From: Asterias rubens
Taxonomy: Eukaryota
NCBI RefSeq assembly: GCF_902459465.1
Contig: NC_047066.1
Span: forward strand, 9,982,001-10,046,000
DNA length: 64,000 nt
Direction of reading: 5' to 3'
The translations under genes were made by a program, and so were the position numbers. The notes under the pieces were generated by a model. The model saw only the letters and a list, made by a program, of their open reading frames with translations, was not told the DNA's origin and did not search any database. This document shows, in pieces, positions 11,576-53,000 of the stretch. The number at the start of each line of letters is the position of its first letter. The first letter of the stretch is position 1.

Positions 11576-12676
11576 CTAAGATGATGATGATGATGATGAT
11601 GTTCTTCGCTGCCTGTGCTCATTAATTTTCTGCACAATCAGCATTCCAAACTCAGCGTGCATCTCCGAGAATGATCGTACATCATGATCATGAAATAGAG
11701 CCTGTCCCGACTTTGGGATTGGCCCGCCTTGCCCAAGTTGTCCCTTATTGAAGAATCGGGCTCTGGTGGTTCCGCTACGTGGCATCATCCTTGGAGATGT
11801 CGATATATTTTCATAGAAGACCGATCTAGCGATGCGTCCAGAACCTGGGGCAGTAGCAGAGTTGGGATTCGAGGGAGGCTTTCGCAAGTTTTGAGAAACA
11901 CTAATGTCCGACTGTAATATACTGGGTTCGTGGCCATTGTTGACGCCCCCACCATTGATGTTCTCCACAAAGAATTGAGGTGCCGTAGAAGACTGGATGC
12001 CATTCCCTTTGTCAGTACCTTTTTGGCTATTGGAAGAAACAAGCGGATCCCAGATGTCATAAGACGGGTTGCTGTACTGCGCTGCAGGCACCGAGTTGCG
12101 CTGGAAGGCATCTTGTCGTGGTGCTCCGTGGTGCGATAGGGACTCTGTTTTCGCTTTATCGTACATGCCCATCTTAACGGGGTATTCAGCCATGTCTTCC
12201 AGGCAGTGGTCATCCGAATGACCTGTTGTGACATAGGAATAGCGCCCCGGACGCATTTGTCCATCTCCGTGTGAGTCATGGGTAAGTTCATCAAGCTGTC
12301 GTTGAAGCTCGTCAACCATCGCCTTCATGTAGTCGTAGCTAGAACACGACAGCGCTCGCATCCAAGACTCCATGTCGTCCTGGCTGTACGCCGACAGAAT
12401 GTACGTCCTCGCTCCATCGCCGGGGAACGAAATCTGGAATGTAAACTGGCTGTCCTCACTGTCTGCCAGTTCCACACGACATCCCTCTAGAATTATAACT
12501 CCCACAGGGTCTCGATCGCCCTTCTTTTCCAAGTAGAACAGAAGATTTCCCTTCAGAACGAACCATCTCCTCTGATACCCTCTGTTTATTTCACCGCGCT
12601 TCGCCAAGATCCCCTCCTTGTCGATGGGCGAGTTGCACGAGGCAAAGTAAGCTACATTACGCTCATTCAACTTCAT
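11576..12676 (-). CDS. PHETA1: Sesquipedalian / PH domain-containing endocytic trafficking adaptor (PHETA/FAM109/IPIP27 family), 366 aa, single coding exon
   Basis: MKLNERNVAYFASCNSPIDKEGILAKRG...RRWFVLKGNLLFY...EPVGVIILEGC-like PH domain (here DPVGVIILEGC), a coiled coil (YDYMKAMVDELQRQLDEL) and a C-terminal F&H motif (SFSEMHAEFG). The start is placed at the family-typical MKLNE (12676), not at the longer ORF start 12715. Confidence 0.92.
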   Translation of the reverse strand: MKLNERNVAYFASCNSPIDKEGILAKRGEINRGYQRRWFVLKGNLLFYLEKKGDRDPVGVIILEGCRVELADSEDSQFTFQISFPGDGARTYILSAYSQDDMESWMRALSCSSYDYMKAMVDELQRQLDELTHDSHGDGQMRPGRYSYVTTGHSDDHCLEDMAEYPVKMGMYDKAKTESLSHHGAPRQDAFQRNSVPAAQYSNPSYDIWDPLVSSNSQKGTDKGNGIQSSTAPQFFVENINGGGVNNGHEPSILQSDISVSQNLRKPPSNPNSATAPGSGRIARSVFYENISTSPRMMPRSGTTRARFFNKGQLGQGGPIPKSGQALFHDHDVRSFSEMHAEFGMLIVQKINEHRQRRTSSSSSSS

Positions 12677-13529
12677 CTTGTTGGAAGTTTTTATTAGAGT
12701 CGAAGTTGCGAACACACAAAAACTTCAGTATGACAGCACAGAAACAGCAACGAGTGCTCTCCCCATGATAACCATGTGATAACTAAGTTCATCCGGCCTG
12801 CTGCATGTAAAGTAGAGTCCTTGAAATTCACTTCGATCACGGATAGTGTGTTATGCAATCATAGGAAGCAAGTAGTAAAATGTTCCCCGCCTGCTGCCTG
12901 TGCGCAGTACGCACTGCTGATGTCCAAAAATAATTTTACTCCGTGTTGGCCAAGCAAAAGTGCACCGGCGTTTCCGCAGCGACAGTGACACCCCTTAATT
13001 AACAGGGGTTGGCCCATGAATCACCATTTTTTCGATGTAACCGGTATCTAGACACGTTCTGGATGTGCTCATCTGTGACAGTTGTGCCAAGCTTGCTAGA
13101 GCGGAGAGTCGTGAAGAAGGAGGCGTTCTTCTCCACAAATCGTACATACGTACGTACACATCTTGAAAGCATTGGTAATCAATCACATTGCCGCGCGCTG
13201 CCACTGATGTTCCGACTGGTACCCGTGGCTCTTTGTAGAAGGGATGGAGTTAAAGTACGGCCGTATATTAAAGGGGTGGCTGGTGGTACAATAATACACA
13301 AAATAAGAACAGTTAAACTTCTTGATTGATGTATATTTATCGAGGACGAACAACTTCAGTAAAAACTAGACATAAGAATTTGTTTGATAACAAATTCGAG
13401 GTGTTCGGATTTCTGGCCTGAATTAACGAGCCATCACTTTTTAAGTTTAGTTGACTGGGGAGATAGTGAGCTATGCTGTGTGTTATTGTGAAAACAAAGT
13501 GAATAGCTATTAAATAACCTTTTTTCTAA

Positions 13530-37376: not shown

Positions 37377-38761
37377 GTAAGTTGCTCTTTGTTTAAATGT
37401 ACACATTTCTATGAAATTTCATGGATTGCTGGAGCAAGGGTACAATTTGTCGGTGTATGTATTATTTGTTCGAAACGGAAAGGGATCAAATTGAGTGCGT
37501 GTTGATCGGGTCGGGTGCCTTTTTTTGAGTTGATTGTCATGTCAGGATTGTGTTGACATTTTGATTCAGGTTGATGTTGATCACCATTCAGACAAAGCCC
37601 CACTTGTGTGGCCAATGGCCATATCACGCAAGTGAGGCTAATTCAGACAGTGATGGACACTGCAGTGACCGAGCTGAGTGTGGATGAGTTACTAACCCTC
37701 CATCCTACGGTCACATTATTACGATTATCGCAGTATCGTAGCGTCATACGTTATCGACCCTTATGTTTTCGGTCCCCAACTTTGATTCCCGTTTACCGCG
37801 AGATTGTGCAAGCTGCACCAGTGACAGAAGCTATGCAGTTTACTCACAGTCTGTATTTTCATCAGGCTTAATCATGCTGAGAAAAAAGTTTCCTGTCGTT
37901 GGTTATGCTCAAACATTTGTAAAATGATTGATTTTTGGTACTAATCACTAGTGCATTATTATGCCAACATTCAAATGAGTCAAAGAAACATCATCCAACC
38001 TCGAAAGTTCAAAACAAAATTACTATCTGCTAGATTGAGTTTCATTCTGCTTTAGTCACTAGATGGATAACGTGAGGTGGTTACTATTTGGGATTCCATG
38101 GTGTGCCAATATGGGGAAAATATTAAAATATTTTAAGTGAAAATGTCAACAAATTTTTATTTTTTATTTACTGCATACTGTAATAAATTCCGATAAGCGT
38201 AATAAATATTAAGTCTACAAATATTAAGTTTTGCATGATCTTAGATGTCAGTCGCTATCTAGTAATTGTGTTTTTTTTCCCCAAAGCACATGGAGTTTTC
38301 CTCACACATCTAAAATCAAAATTTCTTCATTGTCTTCAGAAAAAAGTTGATGTGATATTTCCACCAGTCTGCAGTAGGATGCCAAAACGCTGACTGCATG
38401 TCGTGTTCAAGTGATCTAGAGCACTGAATTCAAGTTGTGGTGTGGTGGCTGAGTCATCACAATAAGTGTTTGAATCTAACTCCTGACAATGCCTGACTGT
38501 AACATTCATATTCAGGTGGATCAAATATTTGAAGGTGTCTTCAAATTATGCTTTTTCCCCATTTGACATCATTTCGCGGAAAATTAATAAAGTTTTCTGA
38601 TGTTCTCTTTTATTTCCAAAGCTTTGACAGTGTGAACTGTTGCCAAACATCTCGTCATAGCGAACATTTAACCCCAATAATGATGATCTATCGGTACGAT
38701 GGTCTTTGGTGCTCAAGTAAACACAACCTAATGTAGCATCTGTTGAGTAGGGTCTTGCCTC

Positions 38762-41700
38762 ATGGAAACCGTAAGTATAGAATGTCATAACAGTTTGCTT
38801 AGCACATCAAAAATTTTGCTCAGCAGAATTTGGGTTACATGTACCAGTCAAATTAACAACTGAAATTACTGACTTGTGACTGGTGCCATATTCAATTTTG
38901 TAGCGTCACAAAAGAAGTTGCCTGTGGATATATTCATTATGCCTATAGGTCTTGGAAAAATCAGTGCTGAAATCAAACATTCGTGAAACACGACACTCAT
39001 CAGGCCTCAAAATAACCCATGGCACCCACAGCAATTGCCTTGGTTCCCTTTGCCTTTGCTGTGGTTGCCCTTTGCAAAGTTCCAAAATAAATTAAAATTT
39101 TCCTGATAGAATTACCCCTTACTATTGATGTGCCTTTTTCGAATGAAATTCAACAAGGCCTAAAATTGTTCATAATCCAAAAATAAACTGTGTAACTATT
39201 TTATGCTTTTCTCTAAACAGGCTACGACACCAGCCCCCAATGAGCTGCTCCTGCCCGTCCCAGTCATCGTTGTTTTAGCCGTCGGAGGATACCTACTTCT
39301 AATTGTTATTCTTCTTGTGGTTCGCCAATGTCTTGTGGTAAATATTAACTTGTGCAGGCCTTGAATAACCCATGGCACCCACATCAATTGCCGTGGTGCC
39401 CTGTACTTTCGCTCTCTGCAAAGTTCCAATACAAATTTACATTTGATTCATAGAAGTGCCCCTTTAAGAGAAACATTGGTGTGCCCCTTTAAGAGAAACA
39501 TTGGTGTGCCCCTTTAAGAGGGAAGTTTAAGGCCTGTTTGTGGGGTTTTAAAGGGTGTGTCAGCTAAAAGATTGGAAATATAAATGCTCACAGAATTGCA
39601 CATAATTTACATGGTTTGAAAACTGTGATGCTGTTGTAATAAGTCTCAAGTCAATGTTTGTGATAAGTTATCATTTCTTCAATCATCTTGTATAAAATGG
39701 TGTTAACAAACTGTCTTTGGGGTAATTAAGTGCACACTGTGTTGCTTTGCAATTGAAATAATTGTTTCTTGTATTTAACGAAACGCTTGTTTGTTGTTGA
39801 AACAAGGCACGGGGCATCTGCATGGCCTGCTCACCCTGCGGAAAAGAAGACGGTAGTCTACAGTGTTGTGATTGTTGGATCTCTTGTGCCGAGGGGTGCA
39901 ACTGCTGTGCCTACCCTAACACCAAGTCATGTCTTGACTCTCTGTGTGGACCTCCTGATGATGTAAGTATGGGTGCGTTCGATTAGCTTCCCTGGGTCGA
40001 CCCCGGTCTTCCCCCAGTACTTTCGAAAAGCTTTGACGTCATTCCAGGGCTTCACCCGGGTCAGCCCCTGATCAGTGCCCTGCTTGTGGAGTGGGTCACT
40101 TTGGGGCTGGCCCCAGGTGCATGACGTCACCACGAGAGGGTGAGTGATCGTTCGATTAGCTCTTGTCAGGGGCTCACCCACTGAGCACTGCAAGGTCAAC
40201 ACAGGGAAGCTAATCAAACGCACCCTATGAAAGGGTTGAGGGAGGGTGGGTGGGGGGGGGGTGAGGGAGGGGGAGGGGGAGTCTATGTGACGGGGAGGAA
40301 AAACATGATTAGTCCCACTGCAGCGATAACAAGAACAATAACGATCACGACGCAAAGAGAACGCGTTCTATTGGTTGAATTGCTCCACGCAGAATACGCA
40401 CCCGCTCATTCAACCAATAGAATGCGTTCTCTTGGCGTTGTTATCGTTCTCGTTCTCGTTATCGCTGCAGTGGGACCGGGCCTTAAGGGGAGACTGGTGA
40501 GGGAGAATGGAGTCTGAGCTTCAGCTAGTGCTATTTCCAAATTTTAAACAATTTTCTTTTTTCTTTTCTTTTTTTCATTATTTTCAGAGGTGCAGCATTG
40601 CTAAATGTTTATCCTGCCAGACGTGTCAAAATGAAACCTGCTGTGGAGACGACAGCTCAGGTTTCGAGGTAAGTCAGACTAGTCCACTTTCCTCATATCA
40701 GAGAGCCTAGGGCTCTGGCTTAGACTCCTTCAGGTTTTCTATAAAAAAAATTATGCTTTCACTAAGGGGCTTAAATCATATAGATGCAGCCTAAGCTGAA
40801 GCTCGAGTCTAAGCCTTGGTTTTGAAATGGCCCATAGAGAAATCAAACAAGTTAAGTAATTCATTACTAAGTTTGCTTCAATTTTCAGATCATAATAATC
40901 ATAAATCTTCAGATTTCTCCCCTCTATTTATGTTTTCAATTCAGCAGCTTATGAAGTTTATTTGAATGCCAAGTGTGCTTGTTGGATTTTAACTTTGACT
41001 TCTGAACTAACATAACATGACATAGCTATCCTTTATCTTTTAACAAAAAGTCCAGAATGAACTAACTCGATTAACCTAAACTAATAATTTCACAAGGTTT
41101 TTAATTATTCTTGAGTCCAAAAAGTAAACAAAATTGATAACCAACCAAAGTTAATAACTTTCGATTCATTTTCGATATCAATCAACCCAATATTTATCAG
41201 CCTAATAATTTGCATCAATCTAGTAAGATAATAGTTTTATCAACCCAAAGTTGATAGTTATTGACCTGATCAATTGACATTTTTGGGCACAATAATTTGT
41301 TATCAACTTATTAAGTTGATAGGCGTTCAGCCAGGAAGTCAATAGCTATCAACCCAAAGTTGATAGTTATTGAACTGATAAGTTGATAGTAATCATACCA
41401 GTAAACTAATATCAACCCCGATTAGTTGACATGCAGCCTCTTGAGTTTCTTTGACAAATCCTTCTTCTTCCCCTGACCTTGATAATATATTATTTTTAGT
41501 TATGTGGGGGCGGGGATACCTGCTCAAGCACTGGGTGTGAAGTGAGTATTTTAGTTGTTTTTGACAATGGCTTTTACATGAATGTCTTTCATCAGCCGAT
41601 TGCTTGCTTCATTGCCCAGGGGTGTTGGTGGTTTTTCCATGAAGTCCTGATCGGGGGATATATTGTACCCTGTTTGGGTGACCTCTATGCAATCTCAGAT

Positions 41701-44700
41701 AGTGTACCTTTTTGGGGGTATATACCTTTTCTAGTGACCGGAGAACATTTTGTGTCTAATAAGAATTCCATTGGCATTTTTACACTTACTCTCATTGAAA
41801 CCTGTGCCTACTTTCATAAAGCTGTTAAGCAGAAAATATTGCTTATCAAATTTATTGCTAAGCAAAATTGAGTCGGCACCAGACACAACAATGCAAACTT
41901 AAAGTAATTTGGGCTGGTAACCTGATTCTGCTAAGCAATTCTATTCTGTGCTTAGCAAGTTTTTGTGCTGAAAGGCTTTATGAAATTGGGCCCTGGTTAT
42001 CCCAATGTGGGTACAATTAAATCCTGATTTGGACTCTTGGTTACCAACAACACCAGTTACCATAGCAACTCATCACTTCATCATCATAAAGCATGCAGTC
42101 ATCTTAATCGTTATCTCATTAAATGCATGCGACTTCAAAGATCTGTCTTCAAAGCAAGCGATCTCGATACCGAGAGAGGACATTAACTTGCATCATGCTC
42201 CATTTACCGGCTCACCGTTGGTATCCTGCTTTTCATCTTTTTGTTTTTCCATCTGTTAAATCCTCCATAAATTCATCTTCCTATACTCTACAGAACCTTA
42301 AGACTCCTTTAGTTAGTGTCTGTAATATGTACAGGTATGGCTATACAATGCACTATTGTTTTCATCTGAACTCTTCCATTCGTTGCTAAAAAAGATCGAT
42401 GTTTTAGGTTGATTGGTCTTGATTTTAAACCTTTCAATATTCCGTGAAAGTGTTATGTGTTAGAAGGTTAAACCAAATTATATTGTTTTTCCCTGATGCA
42501 AACAAATTAACATTGATTAAATCATGTGGTACCGCCTATGCCAAGGATTTGAACAGCCTATAGGCATCAGGCTAGCTTGGTGGTCTAGTGGTAAGACATC
42601 TGCTCTAGCTAGCTATGGTCATGGCCTATGGATTCTGTTCACAGAACTCGGGAAAGTACTGAGTTTACAGTGCTTTATAAACACAGTGTAAGGGTTAAAG
42701 CCAAATTAGAAACCGTCATCGCTGTAAGATCTTCCATTGCGTCATCGCCTTAAGCCCGGTTCATCCTGCGAATGCAAATGCGAAGCGAATTTGACGTGAA
42801 TTTGACGTCACAACTCTGTTTTCGCTGTGAATATTCGCAAGAGTCGAGCACAGCTCAACTGCTGCGAATTATTCAATGCGAATTTGTAACGTCCACATTC
42901 ACTTCAGGAAGTATGAACCAGGCTTCAGTGTGGAACAACAGCGACAGGGAAGCTAATCAGGAACCCAAAGTATAGATGTTGTTGCAATCTTTTGATGCCA
43001 TGCTTTTTGGCAAAGAAGACGGCATCCAATGTGAAGTGATTAAAGGCTACCTCAATTCACCCCCTTCTCCGCCATGTTAGTGTTAATATTCCACACCAAG
43101 TTCATGTAGAAGTATGCATAGAAACTTTCATTTCAAAACATGCCACTCACAAAGTCCACCATTAGAAGTTAAAAGGTCACCCTGTACCTGTTAACCATTT
43201 AATGTCAGTATTCTTAATACATTTATGAGCCCGCCCGCATCTTAATGTGGGGACGGGGACTTTTTGAGAGAGATTTTGCCTTTGGAAAATATCATTTGCC
43301 ACAATGAAATCCTGACTTGACAAAGGAAAAACAACAACGGTTCTCACAATTAGCTCCAGGATTTGGTGTTGTGTGAGAAAAGTGAGAAACACCTTGCTGT
43401 GACTTGCTGAACCTCTGCCATGAGCCACGGCCCAAAATCTGCCACGGTATGCTGGGATCTTGGAATGCTTGGACTTATCTACCATTGAGCTGAATTTAAT
43501 GACAAAAAACGGTGGCGGCTCGGCCATTTTCGTTTGCCATATTTGTACAAAACAGGACAAAGGTTTGGAATTGGGGATTACACAATAACCCCCGGAAAGG
43601 GATTTCACAGAGCATCTTTTCCAGAACTGTTGTTGCTCTTTGTGTGTGTGAAAAGAAGCAAATCTTGGTAGGTGCCTGCCTGTGAACGCTACACGCTTGA
43701 AAGTCTCTTAGATGTAATTGTCAGCTGTCCGGCTATCAGTAAAAAAAAAATTGGGAAAATCTTAAGTTGTCCTGGATAATAAAAAACATCCACCGTATTG
43801 TGTGTAAGTCTTTCAAAAGTATTTTTGCGGATAAACACTTTATCCGATGTTAAGTGGTTAAAGACTTGTTCCTTTGTAGTTAGTTTTTGTGAGGGATATT
43901 TGTGTCCAGCAGAGTTTCATTTGAAATGATCAATAGTTTTCCTGATCATTCAGTGAAATGAGAAAAGATGTACATGTGTACTTTTGGTTGCATTGAAAGA
44001 TTGTTGTGTGTCAAACCCTAGATAACAAACACCCATTCACTACTAAACAAGCACCATATCCTACCTACCAAACAGCCATTCACTACTAAGCACCCCATCT
44101 TACATCAACTACTAATATAAGCACCCTCTATCCTACCTACCAAACACCCCTTCACGACTAAGCACCCTATTCTACCTACCAAAATCTTACCCACCTCTAA
44201 GCACCATATCCTACCCACCAAACACCCCTTCACTACTACTACCTACCAAACACTTACCCACTACTAAGCACCCTGTCCTACCTACCAAACACCCATTCAC
44301 ACAAGCACCCTATCCTATCTACCAAACACCTATCCACTACAAAGCACCCTGTCCTACCTACCAAACACCCATTCACACAAGCACCCTGTCCTACCTACCA
44401 AACACTTACCCACTACAAAGCACCCTATCCTATCTACCAAACACCTACCCACTACAAAGCACCCTATCCTACCTACCAAACACCTACCTACTACAAAGCA
44501 CCCTATCCTACCTACCAAACACCTACCCACTACAAAGCACCCTATCCTACCTACCAAACACCAATCCACTACAAAGCACCCTGTCCTACCTACCAAACAC
44601 CCATTCACACAAGCACCCTATCCTACCTACCAAACACCTACCCACTACAAAGCACCCTATCCTATCTACCAAACACCTATCCACTACAAAGCACCCTATC

Positions 44701-47700
44701 CTATCTACCAAACACCTACCCACTACAAAGCACCCTATCCTACCTACCAAACACCTACCCACTACAAAGCACCCTATCCTATCTACCAAACACCTACCCA
44801 CTACAAAGCACCCTATCCTACCTACCAAACACCTACCCACTACAAAGCACCCTATCCTACATGTACCTACCAAACACCTACCCACTACAAAGCACCCTAT
44901 CCTACCTACCAAACACCTACCCACTACAAAGCACCCTATCCTACCTACCAAACACCTACCCACTACAAAGCACCCTATCCTACCTACCAAACACCTACCC
45001 ACTACAAAGCACCCTATCCGAATTCCAGCTGTTGCCTCATATTGTTATCCCATTTAGCATCATCCCTATCCTACAAGCCTCAATCCCCAACCCTAATTCC
45101 ACTATTACCTCAAATCCCAATCCTTCTATTACCCCATACCTGTATCTCACTTCCAACCTCAAACTTCATCCCCATCCCACTTACCTCATACCCCTGTCCC
45201 ACTCACCTCCTACTCTTACCCCCACTAACCCTATCCCATTAGCCTCAAACCCCTCCCCTATTAACCACACCCCTACTGACCCTCCCCTACTAACCACACC
45301 CCTTTTAGCAATACCCCCGACCAACCAGACCCCAAATCAACCACACCCCAAATCAACCACACCCCGACCAACCACACCCCGACCAACCACACACCCTAAT
45401 AACCACCCCCCTAATAACCCCTCCCCTCTTACCCCTCCCCTACTAACTACACCCCTACTAACCCCTCCCTACTAACCACACCCCAACCATTCCATACCCC
45501 TCCTAACCACACCCCTACTAACCTCTCCCTTACTAACTACACCCCTACTAACCCCTCCCCTACTAAACCCTCCCCTACTAACCCCTCCCCTACTAACCAC
45601 ACCCCTACTAACCCCCCCCCCCCCTACTAACCACACCCCTACTAACCACCCCTGAATGTTTACCTTTCTCGACACACACACAACCTCTTTCTCAAGTCCT
45701 GTTGCAGTTGTGGTGGCCCATCGTGTTGTGATGGGAGCCTAACTGACTCATGTTGTGGGGATGGGGGTCTTTGCTCCTGTCTGAGCTGTGAAGTGAGTAT
45801 TTTTGTTAAATCATCCTTTTTTGATTTTATTGAAGACCTTTGGGTATCTTCATCTGTAGAAGTACCTTTAGTCCAACAGATGTACATTTAAAATTGGTCT
45901 TTTAGTGTTAGCAAGGCTTGAATTTTTGGAAACGGTTTCGAACAGTATACTCTGCTCATCTTCAGACCAAACCGGCTCTTTTCAGAGTCAACACTCCCTC
46001 AAAAAGTGATTTCGTACTTTGTTGTAACCACAAGTTTATATAGTTTATTATGATTCACACCATGCAAAGCTTTAAACATTACTTAGTCTTGGGCAAGTTG
46101 AATATCAATTTTGCAGTGAAGGTCTCCTGAAAAGGTTAAATGTGCTCATTCTTCCCAATTGTTTTATTCTGTCAGTGCATATATCCTATTTTAATTTAGG
46201 ATTTGGTTGTCAACGACAGTAGAAATGTTGACTCTGTTTTTAGACCATGATGTCAAGATCTCAACCCAGGTCTTTCCCATATATATTTTTGTCAAATCCT
46301 GCTTATTGCATGTGTTCAGGAAAACTAGTTCTCATAAAGTTGCTTTGCTTCAGTTGTATCAAAGTTTTATTGCAATTACATCTTATGATCATCCATTATG
46401 CAAATCACTCTCCATGGCAGTGTAAGACCCTTTTGGAAACCCTGGCTTAAGCCCGGTTCATGCTCCCTGCGAATGCGATTGCGAAACGAAACATTTGCTG
46501 CAAAAAACAGGGCTGTAAAGTCAAAACTCATATCGCATTTAAATTCCCAGACAGTATTTAGTTTTGGACTTGAGCCATGGTTTTGAAAAGGACCTGAGAT
46601 AAAATGTACAATCTTTGAAAATTCGTTTAATAGTGAAATCTTTCATTATTCATTAGTCATTGAAGTCAAAATTCATATTGCATTCGAATTCGCAGACAGT
46701 ATTTTGTTGTGGGACTTGAGCCATGGTTTTGAAAAGGACCCGAGATAAAATGTACAATCTTTGAAAATTCATAGTGAAATCTTTCATTATTCATTAGTCA
46801 TTATGTTTCACCCATGTTAATATGCTATACAGTGTAAACCATAGCGTTATATAATCGTATGATCTGACTACATGTACACTAATTGATGACAGTGACTAGT
46901 CCGCAAAAGCAAACAAATGTCACGAGCAGCCTCTGTCTGCCGCACTCACCATTTTGGGAGTCAAATTGCATGTGAACTAGACTGTATAACACACCCGAAA
47001 ATTGACTCCCAAAATGGTGCGACCAAGATAGTGTGATGATGACATGTGTTGAATCGGGTCAACAGACGGCTGGGAAATATAGAAGTAACTAAAAAAGAAT
47101 CATTGGCATTCGACCTCTTTGGACTTTTCCATAGATTATATCTGCAGTTGTTGCCTGGTTTTCTTTTAGATATAGGTAATTTTCCATACAGGGCTATATT
47201 TTATTGCAGGGGCTGGTCATAAATGACAGTCCAGTTATTCTTTGCTATTAACTCCACACAAATGTTCTCACTAATCATAAGGTTTATACATGTAATTGTT
47301 TCTGCGGAGACTTTCAAAACAGAACTAAAGATGACTGCTCTTTACACAAGCGTACTTTGTCTGTTCTTAGCAATGAGTTTTCACAATGTTTAATCATTGT
47401 ACATCTATTTCATTTTGCCGAAGCACAATGAGTAATGTATTTTAGAATGTGCGCTTTATAAATAAATAAAAGTAAAAATGGTAGTTTCTTATACAGCGTG
47501 CATATCTGTCACTCAGTGACACTCGAGTGCTTCAACATACAGCATTTCCTGCAAGGTATGTGGGACTACGTTTGAATGGACCCTTCTCATGAAGTATGCT
47601 AATTACATTCACGCATGCGTACATACCCTGTTGGTTGGCAAACGGCATAGAGTTGTGCACTAAGCAGACGCGCAATCGCGTCTGCGTCACGCACCCATTA

Positions 47701-48131
47701 GCCGTGTACAAAACAGCGCGATGTTCCCTCATTTTGCCAACCAAAACGTTAGTGCGCACGCGCTACGTGCAATTTACATATTTCATGGGAAGGGTCTATT
47801 GTGAGACTATATGGTCCGATTTCACAAAGAGATAAGATTGATCATAACTGCAAATCAATTGTAGTTGCATGATACTGACGATTTGTCTCACGATGGATTT
47901 TATTGCTTGGTGAAATCGGCCCCTAATCCTTTTATAGCACCATGTAATGGTTTACAAGATGTTGTAAATCCATATTATAATGTAAAATGACCCTTTCAAT
48001 ATCATCTTTCTCCATTTCCATCCCCCCCCCCTTTCCTCAAACCACAGTGTGCAGGATGCGACTGTGCTTGCCAGGCGCCGGAGTGTGACACGATCGACTG
48101 CTTTTGCTTCAAGATAAACATGCACAACTAG
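38762..48131 (+). CDS. Uncharacterised single-pass membrane protein with a very Cys-rich tail (~180 aa, 36 Cys)
   Basis: Exons 38762-38770 (MET; least certain), 39221-39337 (ATTPAPNELLLPVPVIVVLAVGGYLLLIVILLVVRQCLV), 39807-39962 (ARGICMACSPC...LCGPPDD), 40588-40668 (RCSIAKC...SSGFE), 45697-45792 (SCCSCGG...CLSCE) and 48048-48131 (CAGCDCACQAPECDTIDCFCFKINMHN*). All junctions are GT-AG and phase 0, and the joined frame is open. Confidence 0.8.
39971..40225. mobile_element. PIF/Harbinger-like MITE with TAT target duplication
   Basis: TIRs GGGTGCGTTCGATTAGCTTCCCTG / CAGGGAAGCTAATCAAACGCACCC, with TAT on both sides. Confidence 0.85.
40312..40482. mobile_element. Palindromic MITE (GTCCCACTGCAGCGATAAC ends)
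   Basis: Long inverted arms; the left end appears clipped. Confidence 0.75.
42752..42925. mobile_element. MITE (AGCCCGGTTCAT ends)
   Basis: Imperfect TIRs and GCGAAT repeats. A partial copy at ~46447-46700 adjoins a ~145-bp local duplication. Confidence 0.65.
44020..45018. repeat. 39-bp minisatellite (CAAACACCTACCCACTACAAAGCACCCTATCCTACCTAC)n, roughly 25 units
   Basis: Direct reading; it gives the 13-aa periodic ORFs in the track. Units are degenerate on the left and homogeneous on the right. Confidence 0.93.
45020..45652. repeat. C-rich low-complexity tract (CCCCTACTAACC-like units)
   Basis: Nearly G-free plus strand with many C3-C5 runs. Confidence 0.85.
47813..47922. mobile_element. Small MITE (GG.CCGATTTCAC ends)
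   Basis: GGTCCGATTTCACAAAG / CTTGGTGAAATCGGCCC inverted termini. Confidence 0.65.
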
Positions 48132-50029
48132 ACGTGGCTGAGCCGAGCGGCGTACACTGTGCTGTAACCATAGCAACTTTACCAACAACAGACAACCGAT
48201 GAGTGGATAATGGTCGTAATATGGAAACAACTTCATCTCTCTGGTAACACGTCCCTAAATACCAAGGTTTTTTGTTTGTTCTGGATGACATTAACAATTT
48301 GTCTTAAAATCACTTTTGACTGATTTTTCAGACCAACGCTTGTTTGTGAGAGAGGATACTATCTTTTACTTGATACTAAAACGTATACCACACGTGGCTT
48401 CATATAGATATGGAAACTAAGTGAAATTCCAGTTGATTTGGTCAAAAAGAAATGAGTATAATTATAATACAATGGCGCACATGCAGAGACCTTTTTCGGT
48501 TTCTGCAATGGCAGGAATAAATACCATGAACAAAATCTAGGTACATGTACAAAATGTTTTCAAACATTTTTTGACTTTCATTTTTGTGGGAGCACAATTG
48601 TTTCATTTACAAATTGACTGCCAGACTTATATTTTCAGTTTGTTAATTCTGTACAGAGCGCGTGTTTATTTATTATTTAGAATATTATTTTGTCACATTA
48701 TGCGTCGTATCGCCCTTAACTGATGACCACAAAATTCAGTAATTTGTTTGCATTAAACATGCATTGCTAATGCACTTGCACAATTTGTTTGCCAAAACGG
48801 TAGCGTACAAACTTTGATAGCTCTTTTTAGTCAAGGAATTTATAACTTTCATTTGAGACACTGAATGTTCAAATAATGAGTTTTGTCGGGACCCAACCTT
48901 GTTACCTGCACTGCAGCCATGTACAAACGATTTATTACAAATATTCACGCATTAAGTTGGCATGTATGAAACATTTATACTATTTTGTTGTTTCGAATCA
49001 TCAGTCAAAATTTACCTGGTGAAAAAAGTAAACAAGTTTGAATTTTTCTGGGAAAAATTTGACGATAAAACTTTTAGGGTTCTGGTGCAAGATTTAATTA
49101 TTTAGTGCCTCACTTTTGTATGTCAGGTTCATAACTCTGTGGAAAACAAAACCCTTTTTTTTACAAACAGTTGCCTTGATGTCCATTTTGACACTAGGTT
49201 TATATTTATTCACCAAATAAAACTTATTAAGACAGCGTAATGTTAATGTCTCCTATCTTTATGTGCTAGGATAAAGATGTGCACTGGTCTTACAGATCTA
49301 TTGAACTCGGGGCCCAATTTCATAAAGCCTGTAAGCATAAAAACCTGCTTAGCACAAACAAATCTTGCTTAGCAAAAATTGCTCAGCAAAAACCAGCTAG
49401 ATCACGATACAGTTACCATGTGTGCGACTGGTACCCAAACCCTATTTTTGCTTAGCAAAGCAATTTTTCAGCAGAATTTTCTGCTTAACAGCTATATAGA
49501 ACTTGGCTCTAGTAACTCTGCTGCCATCTAGCATCCACAAACAAGACTCACATTGTAGTTTGGTCTACCTTTTTGCATGTATATATTTTAGGAAAATAAA
49601 TTTGCAGGGCTCGATTAGATGATCAAATTTAATGTGCATATTTAAATTAAAAAAAAGTTAAATTATTATGGTTTATTCTGCTGAACAAGAGTAATTGATT
49701 CAGATTTACATGATCAATGTGGGAGAATTTAACTCGACACATTTGGAGTTTTTGGAGTTTGGGAGGTTTTTTTTAAAGTGATGTTGTAAATTATTTGACT
49801 TGCATTGTAAGTAGGGTGCAGTCGTTTGTGTGTATTAAGTTTGTAAATTATGTTAATCGTACTTGACATCATTCGGTATTGTAAATATAAAAATTGAATG
49901 GAAAGAAATAAAAATATGAAGAAGAAAAAATAACTGGAAAACAATTTTGAGAGATGAGTTATTACTTTTTTGCCTCTCACTTATAATTAAAGAAAATGAA
50001 TTTTTATACCTAGTGTGTATAACTCATTT

Positions 50030-53000
50030 TCAAGTCATCTTTTGGTGAAGCCATGTCACGTACTTGGACATTCTCGTGTAGACACCGGGATACTCTGGCT
50101 CCCCACAGCCCGCGCCGAAGCTAGTTGTTCCCACCAGATACCACTTGACGATACCAAACTCACCCAAAGAACTGCAGACTAGCGGACCACCAGAATCACC
50201 CTGAAGAACCAACACAATATTATTATTTCAACTAATATCCAATTGCCAAAATTTTAGATTGAAATTCATTATAATCGATTTAAACTAGTTGCAGCATGTT
50301 TTTAATCGACTTAAGGCACTGGAGACTATTGATAATTACTCAAAGTAATTGTTATCATAAAAACTGGATTCCAGTGCCTATAAAGGAACATTACAAACTT
50401 GGTTTTGCTAGCAAAAAAAGTTGCTGGCTGTGTAAGCACGTTATGTAATCCACCATATACATAAACTGTGGCAAACCTGTAGAAGTTCGAGATCGATCGG
50501 CCATCTGGGTCACGAGAGAATAGTGAAAAAACGATAACAAATTTTGCATTGCATCGATGCCAAAACAAAAATGAATAAAACGCTCTCTGGGCGATAGACT
50601 CCAAACGCGAAACTAGATTATTTATGTCTCATCAATTATTAAATTTCAGACAGAAATATTTCAAGGGATGTTTTCTACTATCATCATCAATAGACCGTTG
50701 TAAGTTTTATGTAAATCTGTGATCTTCACGATTTTTGTTTCTTACTAATTCTGTGACGTTCCTTTAAACGAAGACTACATATAAATTTGGAAAATAAATC
50801 AATGAATGTTTTACTTTCTGGTTAACACTTACCTGGCATGTATCAACGTGTCCTAGCAGTTGCAATGACTCTGATGCACAGATCATATTATCAGTGTATC
50901 TCTCGTATACCCCATCACACACTGACTGGGGTACAATAACAACTTGGGCAGCTTGTAAGTAGTACGGAAATCTACCACCAGATGCTATATACACAGAAAA
51001 CAAGATGAAAGGCACTGGACACTATTGGTAATTACTCAAAATAATTGTACTCAAAAAAACTTACTTGTATAGTATTTTAAAAAAACATTGTGAGAAACGG
51101 CTCCCTCTGAAGTAACGTATAGTTTTCGAGAAAGAAGCAATTTTCCACTAAAATATTTGAACTTGATTTCGAGACCTCAGAATTAGATTTTGAGGTCCCA
51201 AAATCAAGCATCTGAAAGCACACAACTTCGTGTGACAAGGGTGTTTTGTCTTCCATTATTATCTCGCAACTTCGACGACCAATTGAGTTCAAAACTTCAC
51301 AGGTTGGTTATTTTGTGCATTTTGTTGAGATACACCAAGTGAGAAGACTGGTCTTTAACCAAAGGTGTCCGGTGTCTTCAACTCTATCAAGCTAACCGGT
51401 GATAAAGTAGGTCTTATTCATACTTCAAAATTATAGCTCCACATACCTTGCAGAAAAATGTCATCTTTGTTGTTGAAACGTGCTCACGTGAAAGGCTCTC
51501 ATTGGCTCTTAGAGTTTGCGTGCACTTGTCCATTGATTTGGCGGCCGATGACGCTATGTGCAACATCTATAACACTGTGGAGACAACTTGTTTTCCCTTT
51601 TTTGTTTTATCCTTGGTATCCATAAGGTAACGCAAATGAGCACAAACTCACCTAGTGATCCCCACCCACTGATATAACACTCCGATTGACTGTCAAACTC
51701 CGTCACTTGACCCTCTTCCTCCTCCTCCTGTTGTAAGCACACCGGGTAAACCCATTGGGATAAGGCAACTGGACTCGAGAGAACCATCACAGCGATGTCG
51801 TTGTTGTTCGTCAGTGAGTTGTAATGAGCGTGGACGTAAACCTTCTTGACTGTCCGAACCTGCTTGCCTCCCCTTTCTCGGATTGTACGGCCAAAGTACA
51901 GTCGCCACAAGTGCCTCGATTTGTACACTCTGTATGTTGAAGACGAAACCGTAAAGGCTATGTTACATCTAATTTAACTTCATCTAAAGGCACTGGACAA
52001 TGGACACTATTGGTAGTTTCTCAAAAAAATTGTCAGCACAAAAACTTCTTAACGAGCAATGGAGAGCTGAGAAACGGCTCCTAGTTTTGATACAAAGAAG
52101 TACTATTTCTCACTCTATTTTCTTGCAACTTCGATGACAAATTGAGCCAACATTTTCACAAGTTTCTAATTTTATGCATATTATGTTGGGTTGCCGTCAT
52201 GTTTGGTTGTCAAAGACCAGTATTCTCACTAACCATGACATTTTTATAAATTAATAACAAACCTGTGAAAATTTGGGCTCAATTGGTAACCGAAGTAGTA
52301 AGAAAATAACGAAAGAAAAAACACCCCTGTTAAGGAGTTTTCTCACAATGTTTTGCACTATCATCAGCTCTCTGCTGCCCGTTACCAAGTAAGTTTCGGT
52401 GTAATATAATTTGAGTATCAAACGTAGTGCTAACTGTGACTTTAGTTGATTAATGAGTGGGTGTTGTGGCTGAGCGGTTAAAGACAGTGGACACTATTGG
52501 TAATATTGTCAAAGACGAGTCTTCACAGTTGGTGTATCTCAACATATGCATAAAATAACAAACCTGTGAACATTTGAATTCAAACGGTCGTCGAATTTGC
52601 GAGATAATAATGAAAGAAGAAAAAACCCTTGTGTCATGAAGTTGTGTGCTTTCTGATGCTTGATTTCGAGACCTCAAAACAAAAATTTATTCTAAACTTG
52701 AGGTCTCGAAATCAAATTCGTGGAAAATTACTTCTTTCTCGAAAACTACGTCACTTCAGAGGGAGCTGTTTCTCACAATGTTTTATACCACCAACCTCTC
52801 CCCATTACTCGTAATCAAGTAAGGTTTTATGATGATAATTATTTTGAGTAATTACCAATAGTGTCCACTGCCTTTAAGATCATCAAACTCAAGCTATGGA
52901 GTTTCTGATCAGCAGAGGGATGTTTACATCTATGACAGCGCAAATTTGCACAGAGATTTTGCCAAAAATGTATAACCTTTGCACCATTGTAGATATTTTC

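What the first reader, a model, noticed from the sequence alone, without database searches (positions are those of the whole stretch)
38762..48131. Membrane-anchored, metallothionein-like Cys-rich protein of unknown function
Seen: a spliceable ~180-aa ORF with no signal peptide, one hydrophobic helix (VPVIVVLAVGGYLLLIVILLVV) followed by RQC, and a tail carrying 35 more Cys in CC, CxC and CxxC motifs among D/E/G/S residues (36 Cys in total, 20%). Established: the positive-inside rule favours N-out/C-in, and cytosolic Cys clusters usually bind Zn/Cu/Cd or are palmitoylated rather than forming disulfides. Inference: a membrane-tethered metal buffer/sensor or a heavily S-acylated scaffold. The terminal CQxPECDxIxCxCFxI motif reminds me of an uncharacterised fish protein (si:ch211-198p11.6); that is unverified recollection. 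If correct, this is an old, unstudied deuterostome family.
Basis: partly seen in the sequence, partly recalled or inferred. Interest (0 to 1): 0.8.

Follow-up and report, generated by a model that had tools for sequence, protein, structure and literature searches.

The report
Membrane-anchored cysteine-rich protein, conserved across bilaterians
This is a real, single-copy starfish gene for a small membrane protein with a very cysteine-rich tail inside the cell; it belongs to an unstudied family found in many invertebrate phyla, and may have a human counterpart in the 16p11.2 region.

Summary
The window is Asterias rubens.

RNA reads did not cover it. So the 180-aa, 36-Cys product is unsupported.

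The family has no Pfam model and no papers in the searched library. It is wider than deuterostomes: echinoderms, hemichordates, a tunicate, molluscs, an annelid and a brachiopod.

Shared features are:
- a short N-terminus almost without K/R;
- a conserved membrane helix followed by Arg;
- a module with 11 conserved Cys;
- a conserved C-terminal Cys motif.

The charge pattern supports N-out/C-in across the family. Metal-thiolate binding is my preferred mechanism, but it is inference only.

A vertebrate link remains an unaligned lead. The ESM Atlas points to homologs of human LOC112694756 (16p11.2). Four starfish orthologs of 16p11.2 genes share the window's chromosome.

The parts
38762..38770 (+). 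Exon 1, coding part (M-E-T). The 5'UTR extends upstream; about 209 nt is inferred from a transcript contig.
   Evidence: Donor GTAAGT. Identical start in NCBI isoforms P0012, P0028 and P0030. A cDNA-like contig of another asteroid, L007, joins a 3-codon start directly to exon 2.
39221..39337 (+). Exon 2: acidic T/P-rich N-terminal segment, membrane helix and RQCLV.
   Evidence: AlphaFold helix at residues 16-43 with pLDDT 86-97. The helix motif LP...I..IA.G.Y plus Arg is conserved.
39807..39962 (+). Exon 3: the main conserved Cys module, 52 aa with 12 Cys, of which 11 are conserved in at least 80% of 33 relatives.
   Evidence: phmmer hits. Per-column conservation, and highest mean pairwise identity of any region at 0.51. 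Single copy in the genome.
40588..40668 (+). Exon 4: 27-aa Cys-rich linker module with conserved CxxC and CC.
   Evidence: The equivalent exon is skipped in sea urchin isoform P0019 and crinoid isoform P0016.
41500..41541 (+). Present in isoforms X1 and X2.
   Evidence: Acceptor ttatttttag and donor gtgagt. Needed to reproduce P0012 exactly. A homologous segment is present in Acanthaster P0011 and Patiria P0033.
45697..45891 (+). In NCBI isoform X1 it is read through to the stop at 45889-45891 as the last coding exon.
   Evidence: Reproduces P0030. No RNA depth in X13, X14 or X1, and intron-level depth in X3. No counterpart in any homolog. No AATAAA or ATTAAA within 700 nt downstream.
48048..48131 (+). 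Exon 6: conserved C-terminal Cys module and the stop codon.
   Evidence: Run X3's contig starts exactly at 48048, and run X1's 1303-nt contig aligns from 48046 at contig position 571. The two fixed differences in the sister species, at 48101 and 48104, are synonymous.
48132..49339 (+). 3'UTR, reaching at least this far.
   Evidence: Contig pieces 48046-48686 and 48749-49339 in X1 and 48048-49027 in X3, plus raw-read depth.

Best explanation
Shown: this is a single-copy, transcribed Asterias rubens gene with three annotated isoforms. It belongs to an uncharacterised protein family conserved across Bilateria.

The protein has, in order:
- a 7-36 residue acidic, S/T/P-rich N-terminus;
- one strongly conserved membrane helix ending in Arg;
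- a tail of about 105-125 residues carrying 25-28 Cys in fixed positions.

Inferred with high confidence from charge distribution: the N-terminus faces outside or the lumen, and the Cys-rich tail is cytosolic (a type III signal anchor).

Inferred mechanism: in the reducing cytosol the tail folds around metal-thiolate clusters (Zn(II) or Cu(I)). This would hold a metal-binding module against a membrane, either as a local metal buffer or sensor, or as a metal-stabilised docking surface. The conserved helix may pair with a membrane partner. Phase-0 Cys-rich cassette exons (E4, E5', E5) let splicing change the number of thiolates.
For: Gene and isoforms: exact match to three NCBI models. E6 and the 3'UTR are transcribed, with contigs breaking at the E6 acceptor. 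RNA-like runs hold 0.13-0.17 of the words of 38700-40700, close to my estimate of the exonic share (about 0.155).

Family: covering echinoderms, hemichordates, the tunicate Styela, molluscs, an annelid and a brachiopod.

Topology: 29 of 31 members have no K/R before the helix and 1-4 K/R after it. No Cys lies in the N-terminal segment.

A structured module rather than mere composition:
- 14 Cys columns are at least 80% conserved, with fixed spacing, and 11 of them lie in exon 3.
- Non-Cys residues are also conserved or nearly so (G45, G54, W66, P79, L85, D86, P91).
- Eleven Cys equals the thiolate count of a metallothionein alpha domain (M4Cys11). This rests on established knowledge and is an analogy only.

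Cassette splicing recurs in sea urchin, crinoid and Acanthaster isoforms.
Against: - No metal binding was measured.
- AlphaFold gave pLDDT below 50 for the whole tail, so no fold supports a cluster geometry.
- No metallothionein or other Pfam model matches.
- There is no MRE core (TGCRCNC) in the 1.7 kb upstream of the ATG, unlike metal-inducible metallothionein genes.
- Conserved aromatic residues (W66, F143) are unusual for metallothioneins.
- Dense S-acylation would explain a cytosolic Cys-rich tail as well.
Confidence: 0.5

Rival explanations
1. The tail is a heavily S-acylated scaffold. Many of its cytosolic Cys are palmitoylated, pinning the tail flat on the membrane as in cysteine-string protein. 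This would organise a lipid microdomain or recruit partners.
For: The tail is predicted to be cytosolic and starts directly at the membrane. AlphaFold sees no autonomous fold. CC and CxC runs resemble known acylation clusters (established knowledge of DNAJC5, SNAP25 and Sprouty).
Against: The juxtamembrane Cys of RQC is not conserved. Conserved Cys extend more than 100 residues from the helix with strict spacing, and are accompanied by conserved G, W, P, L and D residues. That fits a fold better than lipid anchors. No DnaJ or Sprouty model matches.
Confidence: 0.2
2. The tail is a redox or Fe-S module. The thiols act as a membrane-tethered redox sensor or buffer, or ligate an iron-sulfur cluster, as in the N-terminally anchored mitoNEET.
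For: The architecture (N-terminal anchor with a cytosolic Cys module) parallels CISD1 (established knowledge). A high density of cytosolic thiols is compatible with this.
Against: No CDGSH or other Fe-S family matched. No conserved His was found. There are far more Cys than any known Fe-S site needs.
Confidence: 0.1
3. The topology is reversed. The Cys-rich part is luminal or extracellular and disulfide-bonded, forming a small knotted ectodomain such as a receptor or ligand.
For: Dense conserved Cys with fixed spacing is typical of disulfide-rich ectodomains. One N-x-T sequon lies in exon 4 of the starfish protein.
Against: The positive-inside pattern is uniform in 31 members. There is essentially no K/R before the helix and an invariant or near-invariant Arg right after it. 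There is no signal peptide. Total Cys numbers are odd in some members and even in others.
Confidence: 0.07
4. The reader's exact 180-aa, 36-Cys protein (E4-E5-E6) is a genuine minor isoform.
For: Exon 5 has an AG acceptor and a GTGAGT donor, and it is in phase 0, so E5-E6 splicing would stay in frame. NCBI isoform X1 uses the same acceptor.
Against: It does not match any annotated isoform. RNA depth over exon 5 is zero or at intron level. No 45792-48048 joint appears among the listed joints, though 79 joints were not shown. Exon 5 has no counterpart in any relative.
Confidence: 0.15

Closest known systems
Orthologous predicted proteins in other invertebrates, e.g. Strongylocentrotus purpuratus LOC757040, Acanthaster planci XP_022093229, Ptychodera flava XP_070571874, Octopus bimaculoides LOC106878842
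   Same: Same architecture and motifs from end to end, with E-values of 1e-30 to 1e-96.
   Different: They have different numbers of Cys-rich cassette modules. Tunicate and some mollusc members carry extra insertions or long C-terminal extensions. None is characterised.
Keratin-associated proteins KAP5/KAP17 (the automatic NCBI name of this gene)
   Same: Only the high Cys, Gly and Ser composition.
   Different: No Pfam Keratin_B2 or Keratin_B2_2 match. This protein has a membrane helix and occurs in animals without hair. The name is a composition artefact.
Metallothioneins
   Same: Cys density of 17-18% in CC, CxC and CxxC patterns. The main module has 11 conserved Cys, the count of an M4Cys11 alpha domain.
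   Different: Metallothioneins are soluble and about 60-70 aa long, and conserved aromatic residues are unusual in them. Here there is a membrane anchor and conserved W and F, no metallothionein HMM match, and no proximal MRE.
CYSTM and PLAC8/PCR small Cys-rich membrane proteins
   Same: They are small eukaryotic membrane proteins rich in Cys, linked in the literature to metal and stress tolerance (my own knowledge).
   Different: CYSTM is tail-anchored with its Cys inside the helix, and PLAC8 has the CCxxxxCPC motif. Neither HMM matches, and the architecture here is reversed.
Cysteine-string protein (DNAJC5) and other S-acylated Cys clusters
   Same: A cytosolic run of Cys held at a membrane.
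   Different: There is no J domain. The Cys here are spread over more than 100 residues with conserved spacing and conserved non-Cys residues. The juxtamembrane Cys is not conserved.
Human LOC112694756 (16p11.2, between TLCD3B and ALDOA) and its vertebrate homologs
   Same: It is the top ESM Atlas cluster for the 148-aa isoform: 151 aa, Chordata, score 0.95, 216 of 256 shared features. Starfish orthologs of ALDOA, MVP, QPRT and PAGR1 all lie on the window's chromosome.
   Different: No alignment could be made. The score falls to 0.80 with the tail alone. Neither phmmer nor the profile searches returned a vertebrate. Homology is therefore unproven.

Membership tests
Unnamed bilaterian family of helix plus Cys-rich tail proteins (S. 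purpuratus LOC757040 and relatives) | Short N-terminal segment almost free of K/R, then a helix with LP...I..IA.G.Y ending in Arg | tested here: met
   Alignment A3 and the charge table.
Unnamed bilaterian family of helix plus Cys-rich tail proteins (S. purpuratus LOC757040 and relatives) | Module C-x2-C-x2-CGKE ... CC-x-CW ... C-x-CC-x2-P-x4-CLDS-x-C | tested here: met
   Exon 3 holds all 11 conserved Cys plus G54, K55, W66, P79 and L85-D86-S87.
Unnamed bilaterian family of helix plus Cys-rich tail proteins (S. purpuratus LOC757040 and relatives) | C-terminal motif C-x-C ... P-[ED]-C-x3-C-x-CF near the end | tested here: met
   Exon 6 carries it. Isoform X1 lacks it.
Keratin-associated proteins (KAP5/KAP17) | Match to Pfam Keratin_B2 or Keratin_B2_2 repeats | tested here: not met
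   No such hit at E up to 1 in 18 members, or at E up to 0.1 in the starfish isoforms.
Metallothionein | Match to a metallothionein sequence family | tested here: not met
   No Pfam metallothionein hit.
Metallothionein | Small soluble protein without a membrane anchor and without conserved aromatic residues | tested here: not met
   Confident membrane helix. W66 and F143 are conserved.
Metallothionein | Binds several Zn, Cd or Cu ions through thiolate clusters | not testable with these tools
   Needs ICP-MS or native MS of the purified tail.
Metallothionein | Metal-responsive elements clustered in the proximal promoter | tested here: not met
   No TGCRCNC between 36995 and 38761, and the window-wide count is at chance level. 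The transcription start is not mapped precisely.
CYSTM / PLAC8 | Match to PF12734 or PF04749 | tested here: not met
   No hits.
S-acylated cysteine-string type proteins | Conserved Cys cluster at the membrane interface serving as the acylation site | tested here: inconclusive
   C40, next to the helix, varies between C, F, I and L. The first conserved Cys lies about 9 residues after the helix. Acylation itself is not testable here.
Vertebrate LOC112694756 homologs | Alignable sequence with the family motifs | not testable with these tools
   The Atlas returns no sequence or id, and the capped sequence searches returned no vertebrate.
Vertebrate LOC112694756 homologs | Conserved chromosomal neighbourhood | tested here: inconclusive
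   Four of four 16p11.2 marker genes lie on starfish chromosome C5, which also carries the window. Two control genes lie on C9 and C19. This is chromosome-scale linkage only, 3-12 Mb apart.

The most novel reading that the evidence does not exclude
The gene is the starfish ortholog of human LOC112694756 in the 16p11.2 BP4-BP5 copy-number region. The family would then be an ancient bilaterian membrane-tethered metal-thiolate protein. That would give a first functional handle, and tractable invertebrate models, for an unstudied human gene inside a CNV linked to autism and obesity.
Probability: 0.3. Interest if true: 0.8.

Novelty: new variant of a known kind. Interest (0 to 1): 0.55.

Why it matters
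The family combines three things: one membrane helix conserved across phyla, a cytosolic tail with about 25 positionally conserved cysteines, and splicing that adds or removes Cys-rich cassettes. It has no Pfam model, no solved structure, and no paper in the library searched. Public databases name it as a hair keratin-associated protein, which is wrong.

If the tail binds metal, it would be a membrane-tethered counterpart of metallothionein. That bears on how cells handle Zn and Cu next to transporters.

If the link to human LOC112694756 holds, an unnamed gene in the 16p11.2 deletion/duplication interval gains a conserved family, a predicted topology and a testable biochemical hypothesis.

Tried and rejected
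- Pfam on single exons and on full-length isoforms and relatives gave nothing meaningful. The weak ECSCR, DUF6111 and DPM3 hits reflect the helix only.
- A profile search of PDB sequences gave only an E 0.2 chance hit.
- ESM Atlas with exon 3 alone gave no usable hit.
- AlphaFold2 with a 33-sequence alignment was confident only for the helix. The tail had pLDDT below 50, so I ran no fold search.
- A paralog search in the same genome found none.
- Paper searches for the zebrafish clone name, LOC757040 and the NCBI product names found nothing relevant. One search was badly framed and useless.
- AC093512.2/ENSG00000285043 appears in 16p11.2 gene lists. I could not establish that it is the same gene as LOC112694756, so I do not use it.
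- I considered whether exon 5 derives from an inverted copy of the adjacent minisatellite. No inverted repeat supports this.
- The metagenome scan returned only two echinoderm-like loci and no new phylum.
- Source look-ups for the unnamed Logan, ENA and JGI relatives gave no taxonomy.
- I ran no protein-complex prediction, because the report makes no binding claim.
Full report
**What is in the sequence.**
On the + strand between 38762 and 48131 there are six segments with canonical GT-AG borders, all in phase 0. The window contains no N. Its base composition, long introns and intronic minisatellites show it is eukaryotic.

**Identity of the locus.**
The window is G000:C5:9982001-10046000 of a 417.6-Mb assembly. 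Using window coordinates, I rebuilt three Asterias rubens RefSeq proteins letter for letter:
- XP_033627588 (isoform X3, 148 aa, 26 Cys) is E1-E4 + E6.
- XP_033627586 (X2, 162 aa, 29 Cys) adds a 14-aa cassette exon at 41500-41541.
It has no E6.

NCBI names the gene 'keratin-associated protein 17-1-like' or '5-4-like'.

**RNA evidence.**
I had one read-laying run, limited to 6 kb, and spent it on the doubtful part, 45650-50149.

Exon 5:
- Depth was 0 in two raw RNA runs (X13, X14) and 0 in contig run X1.
- Depth was about 5 in X3. The same run covers the neighbouring intron at about 6-13, so this is background and not an exon signal.

E6 and the 3'UTR:
- E6 plus at least 1.2 kb of 3'UTR were covered in all four runs.
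- X3's 972-nt contig begins exactly at 48048.
- X1's 1303-nt contig aligns from 48046 at its position 571.
- The two extra matching bases (AG) fit an E4-E6 junction. They imply roughly 209 nt of 5'UTR. Both points are inference.

Caveats and related observations:
- X13, X14 and X1 carry fixed differences from the window (about 5% in the UTR), so they come from a sister species. X3 is nearly identical to the window.
- The two fixed differences inside E6 are synonymous.
- RNA-like runs held 0.13-0.17 of the words of 38700-40700. I calculate the exonic share of that stretch at about 0.155.
- A cDNA-like contig from another asteroid joins E1, E2 and E3 without introns.

**The family.**
- phmmer with exon 3 against 1.84 billion representatives gave 7 hits.
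- Full-length and profile searches added many more.
- Named sources cover these groups:
  - asteroids, echinoids, an ophiuroid and crinoids;
  - three hemichordates;
  - the tunicate Styela;
  - gastropods, bivalves, a chiton and Octopus;
  - the annelid Paralvinella;
  - the brachiopod Lingula.
- The family is therefore bilaterian, not deuterostome-specific.
- No vertebrate, cephalochordate, ecdysozoan or cnidarian was returned, but the searches were capped and limited in sensitivity.
- The gene is single-copy in the starfish genome.
- No Pfam family matches any member. No PDB sequence matches. No paper was found.

**Anatomy.**
1. The N-terminal segment is 7-36 residues long, rich in S/T/P and D/E, and has no Cys. 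It has no K/R in 29 of 31 members.
2. The membrane helix has a conserved pattern (LP...I..IA.G.Y) and is followed by a nearly invariant Arg. AlphaFold models the helix with pLDDT 86-97.
3. The exon 3 module has 11 Cys conserved in at least 80% of 33 sequences, plus conserved G, K, W, P and L-D-S residues. It is the best-conserved region, with mean pairwise identity 0.51.
4. The exon 4 linker module has a conserved CxxC and CC.
5. The C-terminal module carries C-x-C runs and the motif P-[ED]-C...C-x-CF.

The Cys of RQC next to the helix is not conserved. Cys-rich cassette exons are alternatively used in starfish, sea urchin and crinoid models.

**Topology.**
The hydrophobic stretch is too long for a cleavable signal peptide, and its N-flank is acidic. 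Together with the family-wide positive-inside pattern, this makes N-out/C-in very likely. This step is an inference from an established rule and has not been measured.

**Mechanism.**
A cytosolic tail with about 25 positionally conserved thiols cannot be disulfide-bonded in a stable way. The fixed spacing and the conserved non-Cys residues argue for a defined fold. In the cytosol, such a fold is most simply held together by metal-thiolate clusters.

I rate metal binding at about 0.5, dense S-acylation at about 0.2, redox or Fe-S roles at about 0.1, and reversed topology at about 0.07.

Evidence against a classical metallothionein:
- no HMM match;
- conserved aromatic residues;
- a membrane anchor;
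- no MRE core within 1.7 kb upstream of the ATG.

AlphaFold gave no confident tail fold. With a shallow alignment and no metal in the model, this is uninformative.

**Vertebrate lead.**
- The ESM Atlas's best cluster for the 148-aa isoform is named 'uncharaterized LOC112694756 homolog': 151 aa, Chordata, score 0.95, 216 of 256 shared features.
- With the tail alone the score drops to 0.80, and the cluster ranks second.
- LOC112694756 is listed between TLCD3B and ALDOA in the human 16p11.2 BP4-BP5 interval (PMC11354020).
- I tested linkage. The starfish orthologs of ALDOA (C5:3.43 Mb), PAGR1 (4.32 Mb), MVP (6.66 Mb) and QPRT (21.65 Mb) all lie on chromosome C5, which carries the window at 10.0 Mb. 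C5 makes up 5.4% of the genome.
- The control genes PGK and TPI lie on C9 and C19.
- This supports orthology but does not prove it. No alignment was possible with the tools left.

**Verdict.**
The gene model was already in RefSeq. The new points are the recognition of a conserved, misnamed and unstudied family, its topology, and the possible human counterpart.

Noticed in passing
window 44024-45649: Intron 4 holds two C-rich minisatellites: a 39-nt unit repeated about 20 times at 44239-45019, and a 15-nt unit repeated about 26 times at 45255-45649. They create long spurious ORFs on both strands and a GC skew of -0.73.
   Followed up: partly
window 45950-46100, 46400-46550, 47450-47940, 49250-49400: These are dispersed repeats. 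RNA reads from elsewhere pile up here at 93-99% identity, with sharp loose ends at 47575, 47800, 49310 and 49341. They look like transcribed transposon copies, not exons of this gene.
   Followed up: no
window 11576-12715 (-): A single-exon gene with a PH domain (Pfam PH, E 4.6e-21).
   Followed up: partly
window 51554-51928 (-): An exon of a trypsin-like serine protease (Pfam Trypsin, E 2.5e-13), downstream of the Cys-rich gene on the opposite strand.
   Followed up: no
G000 chromosome C5 (3.43, 4.32, 6.66, 21.65 Mb): Starfish orthologs of four human 16p11.2 genes (ALDOA, PAGR1, MVP, QPRT) share one chromosome, while PGK and TPI lie on C9 and C19. This chromosome appears to correspond to the ancestral linkage group that contains the human 16p11.2 block.
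   Followed up: partly
P0019, P0016, P0032 versus P0036, P0013, P0011: Alternative inclusion of phase-0 Cys-rich cassette exons recurs in sea urchin, crinoid and crown-of-thorns models of the same gene. This suggests that a variable thiol count is a conserved property.
   Followed up: partly
window 39456-39520: A perfect 25-nt tandem repeat (2.6 copies) lies in intron 2.
   Followed up: no
P0026, P0040 (Styela) and P0048 (Littorina): The tunicate members have an extra Cys-rich insertion between the helix and the main module, plus a long P/Y/S-rich C-terminal extension. A periwinkle member has a long R/S-rich extension.
   Followed up: no
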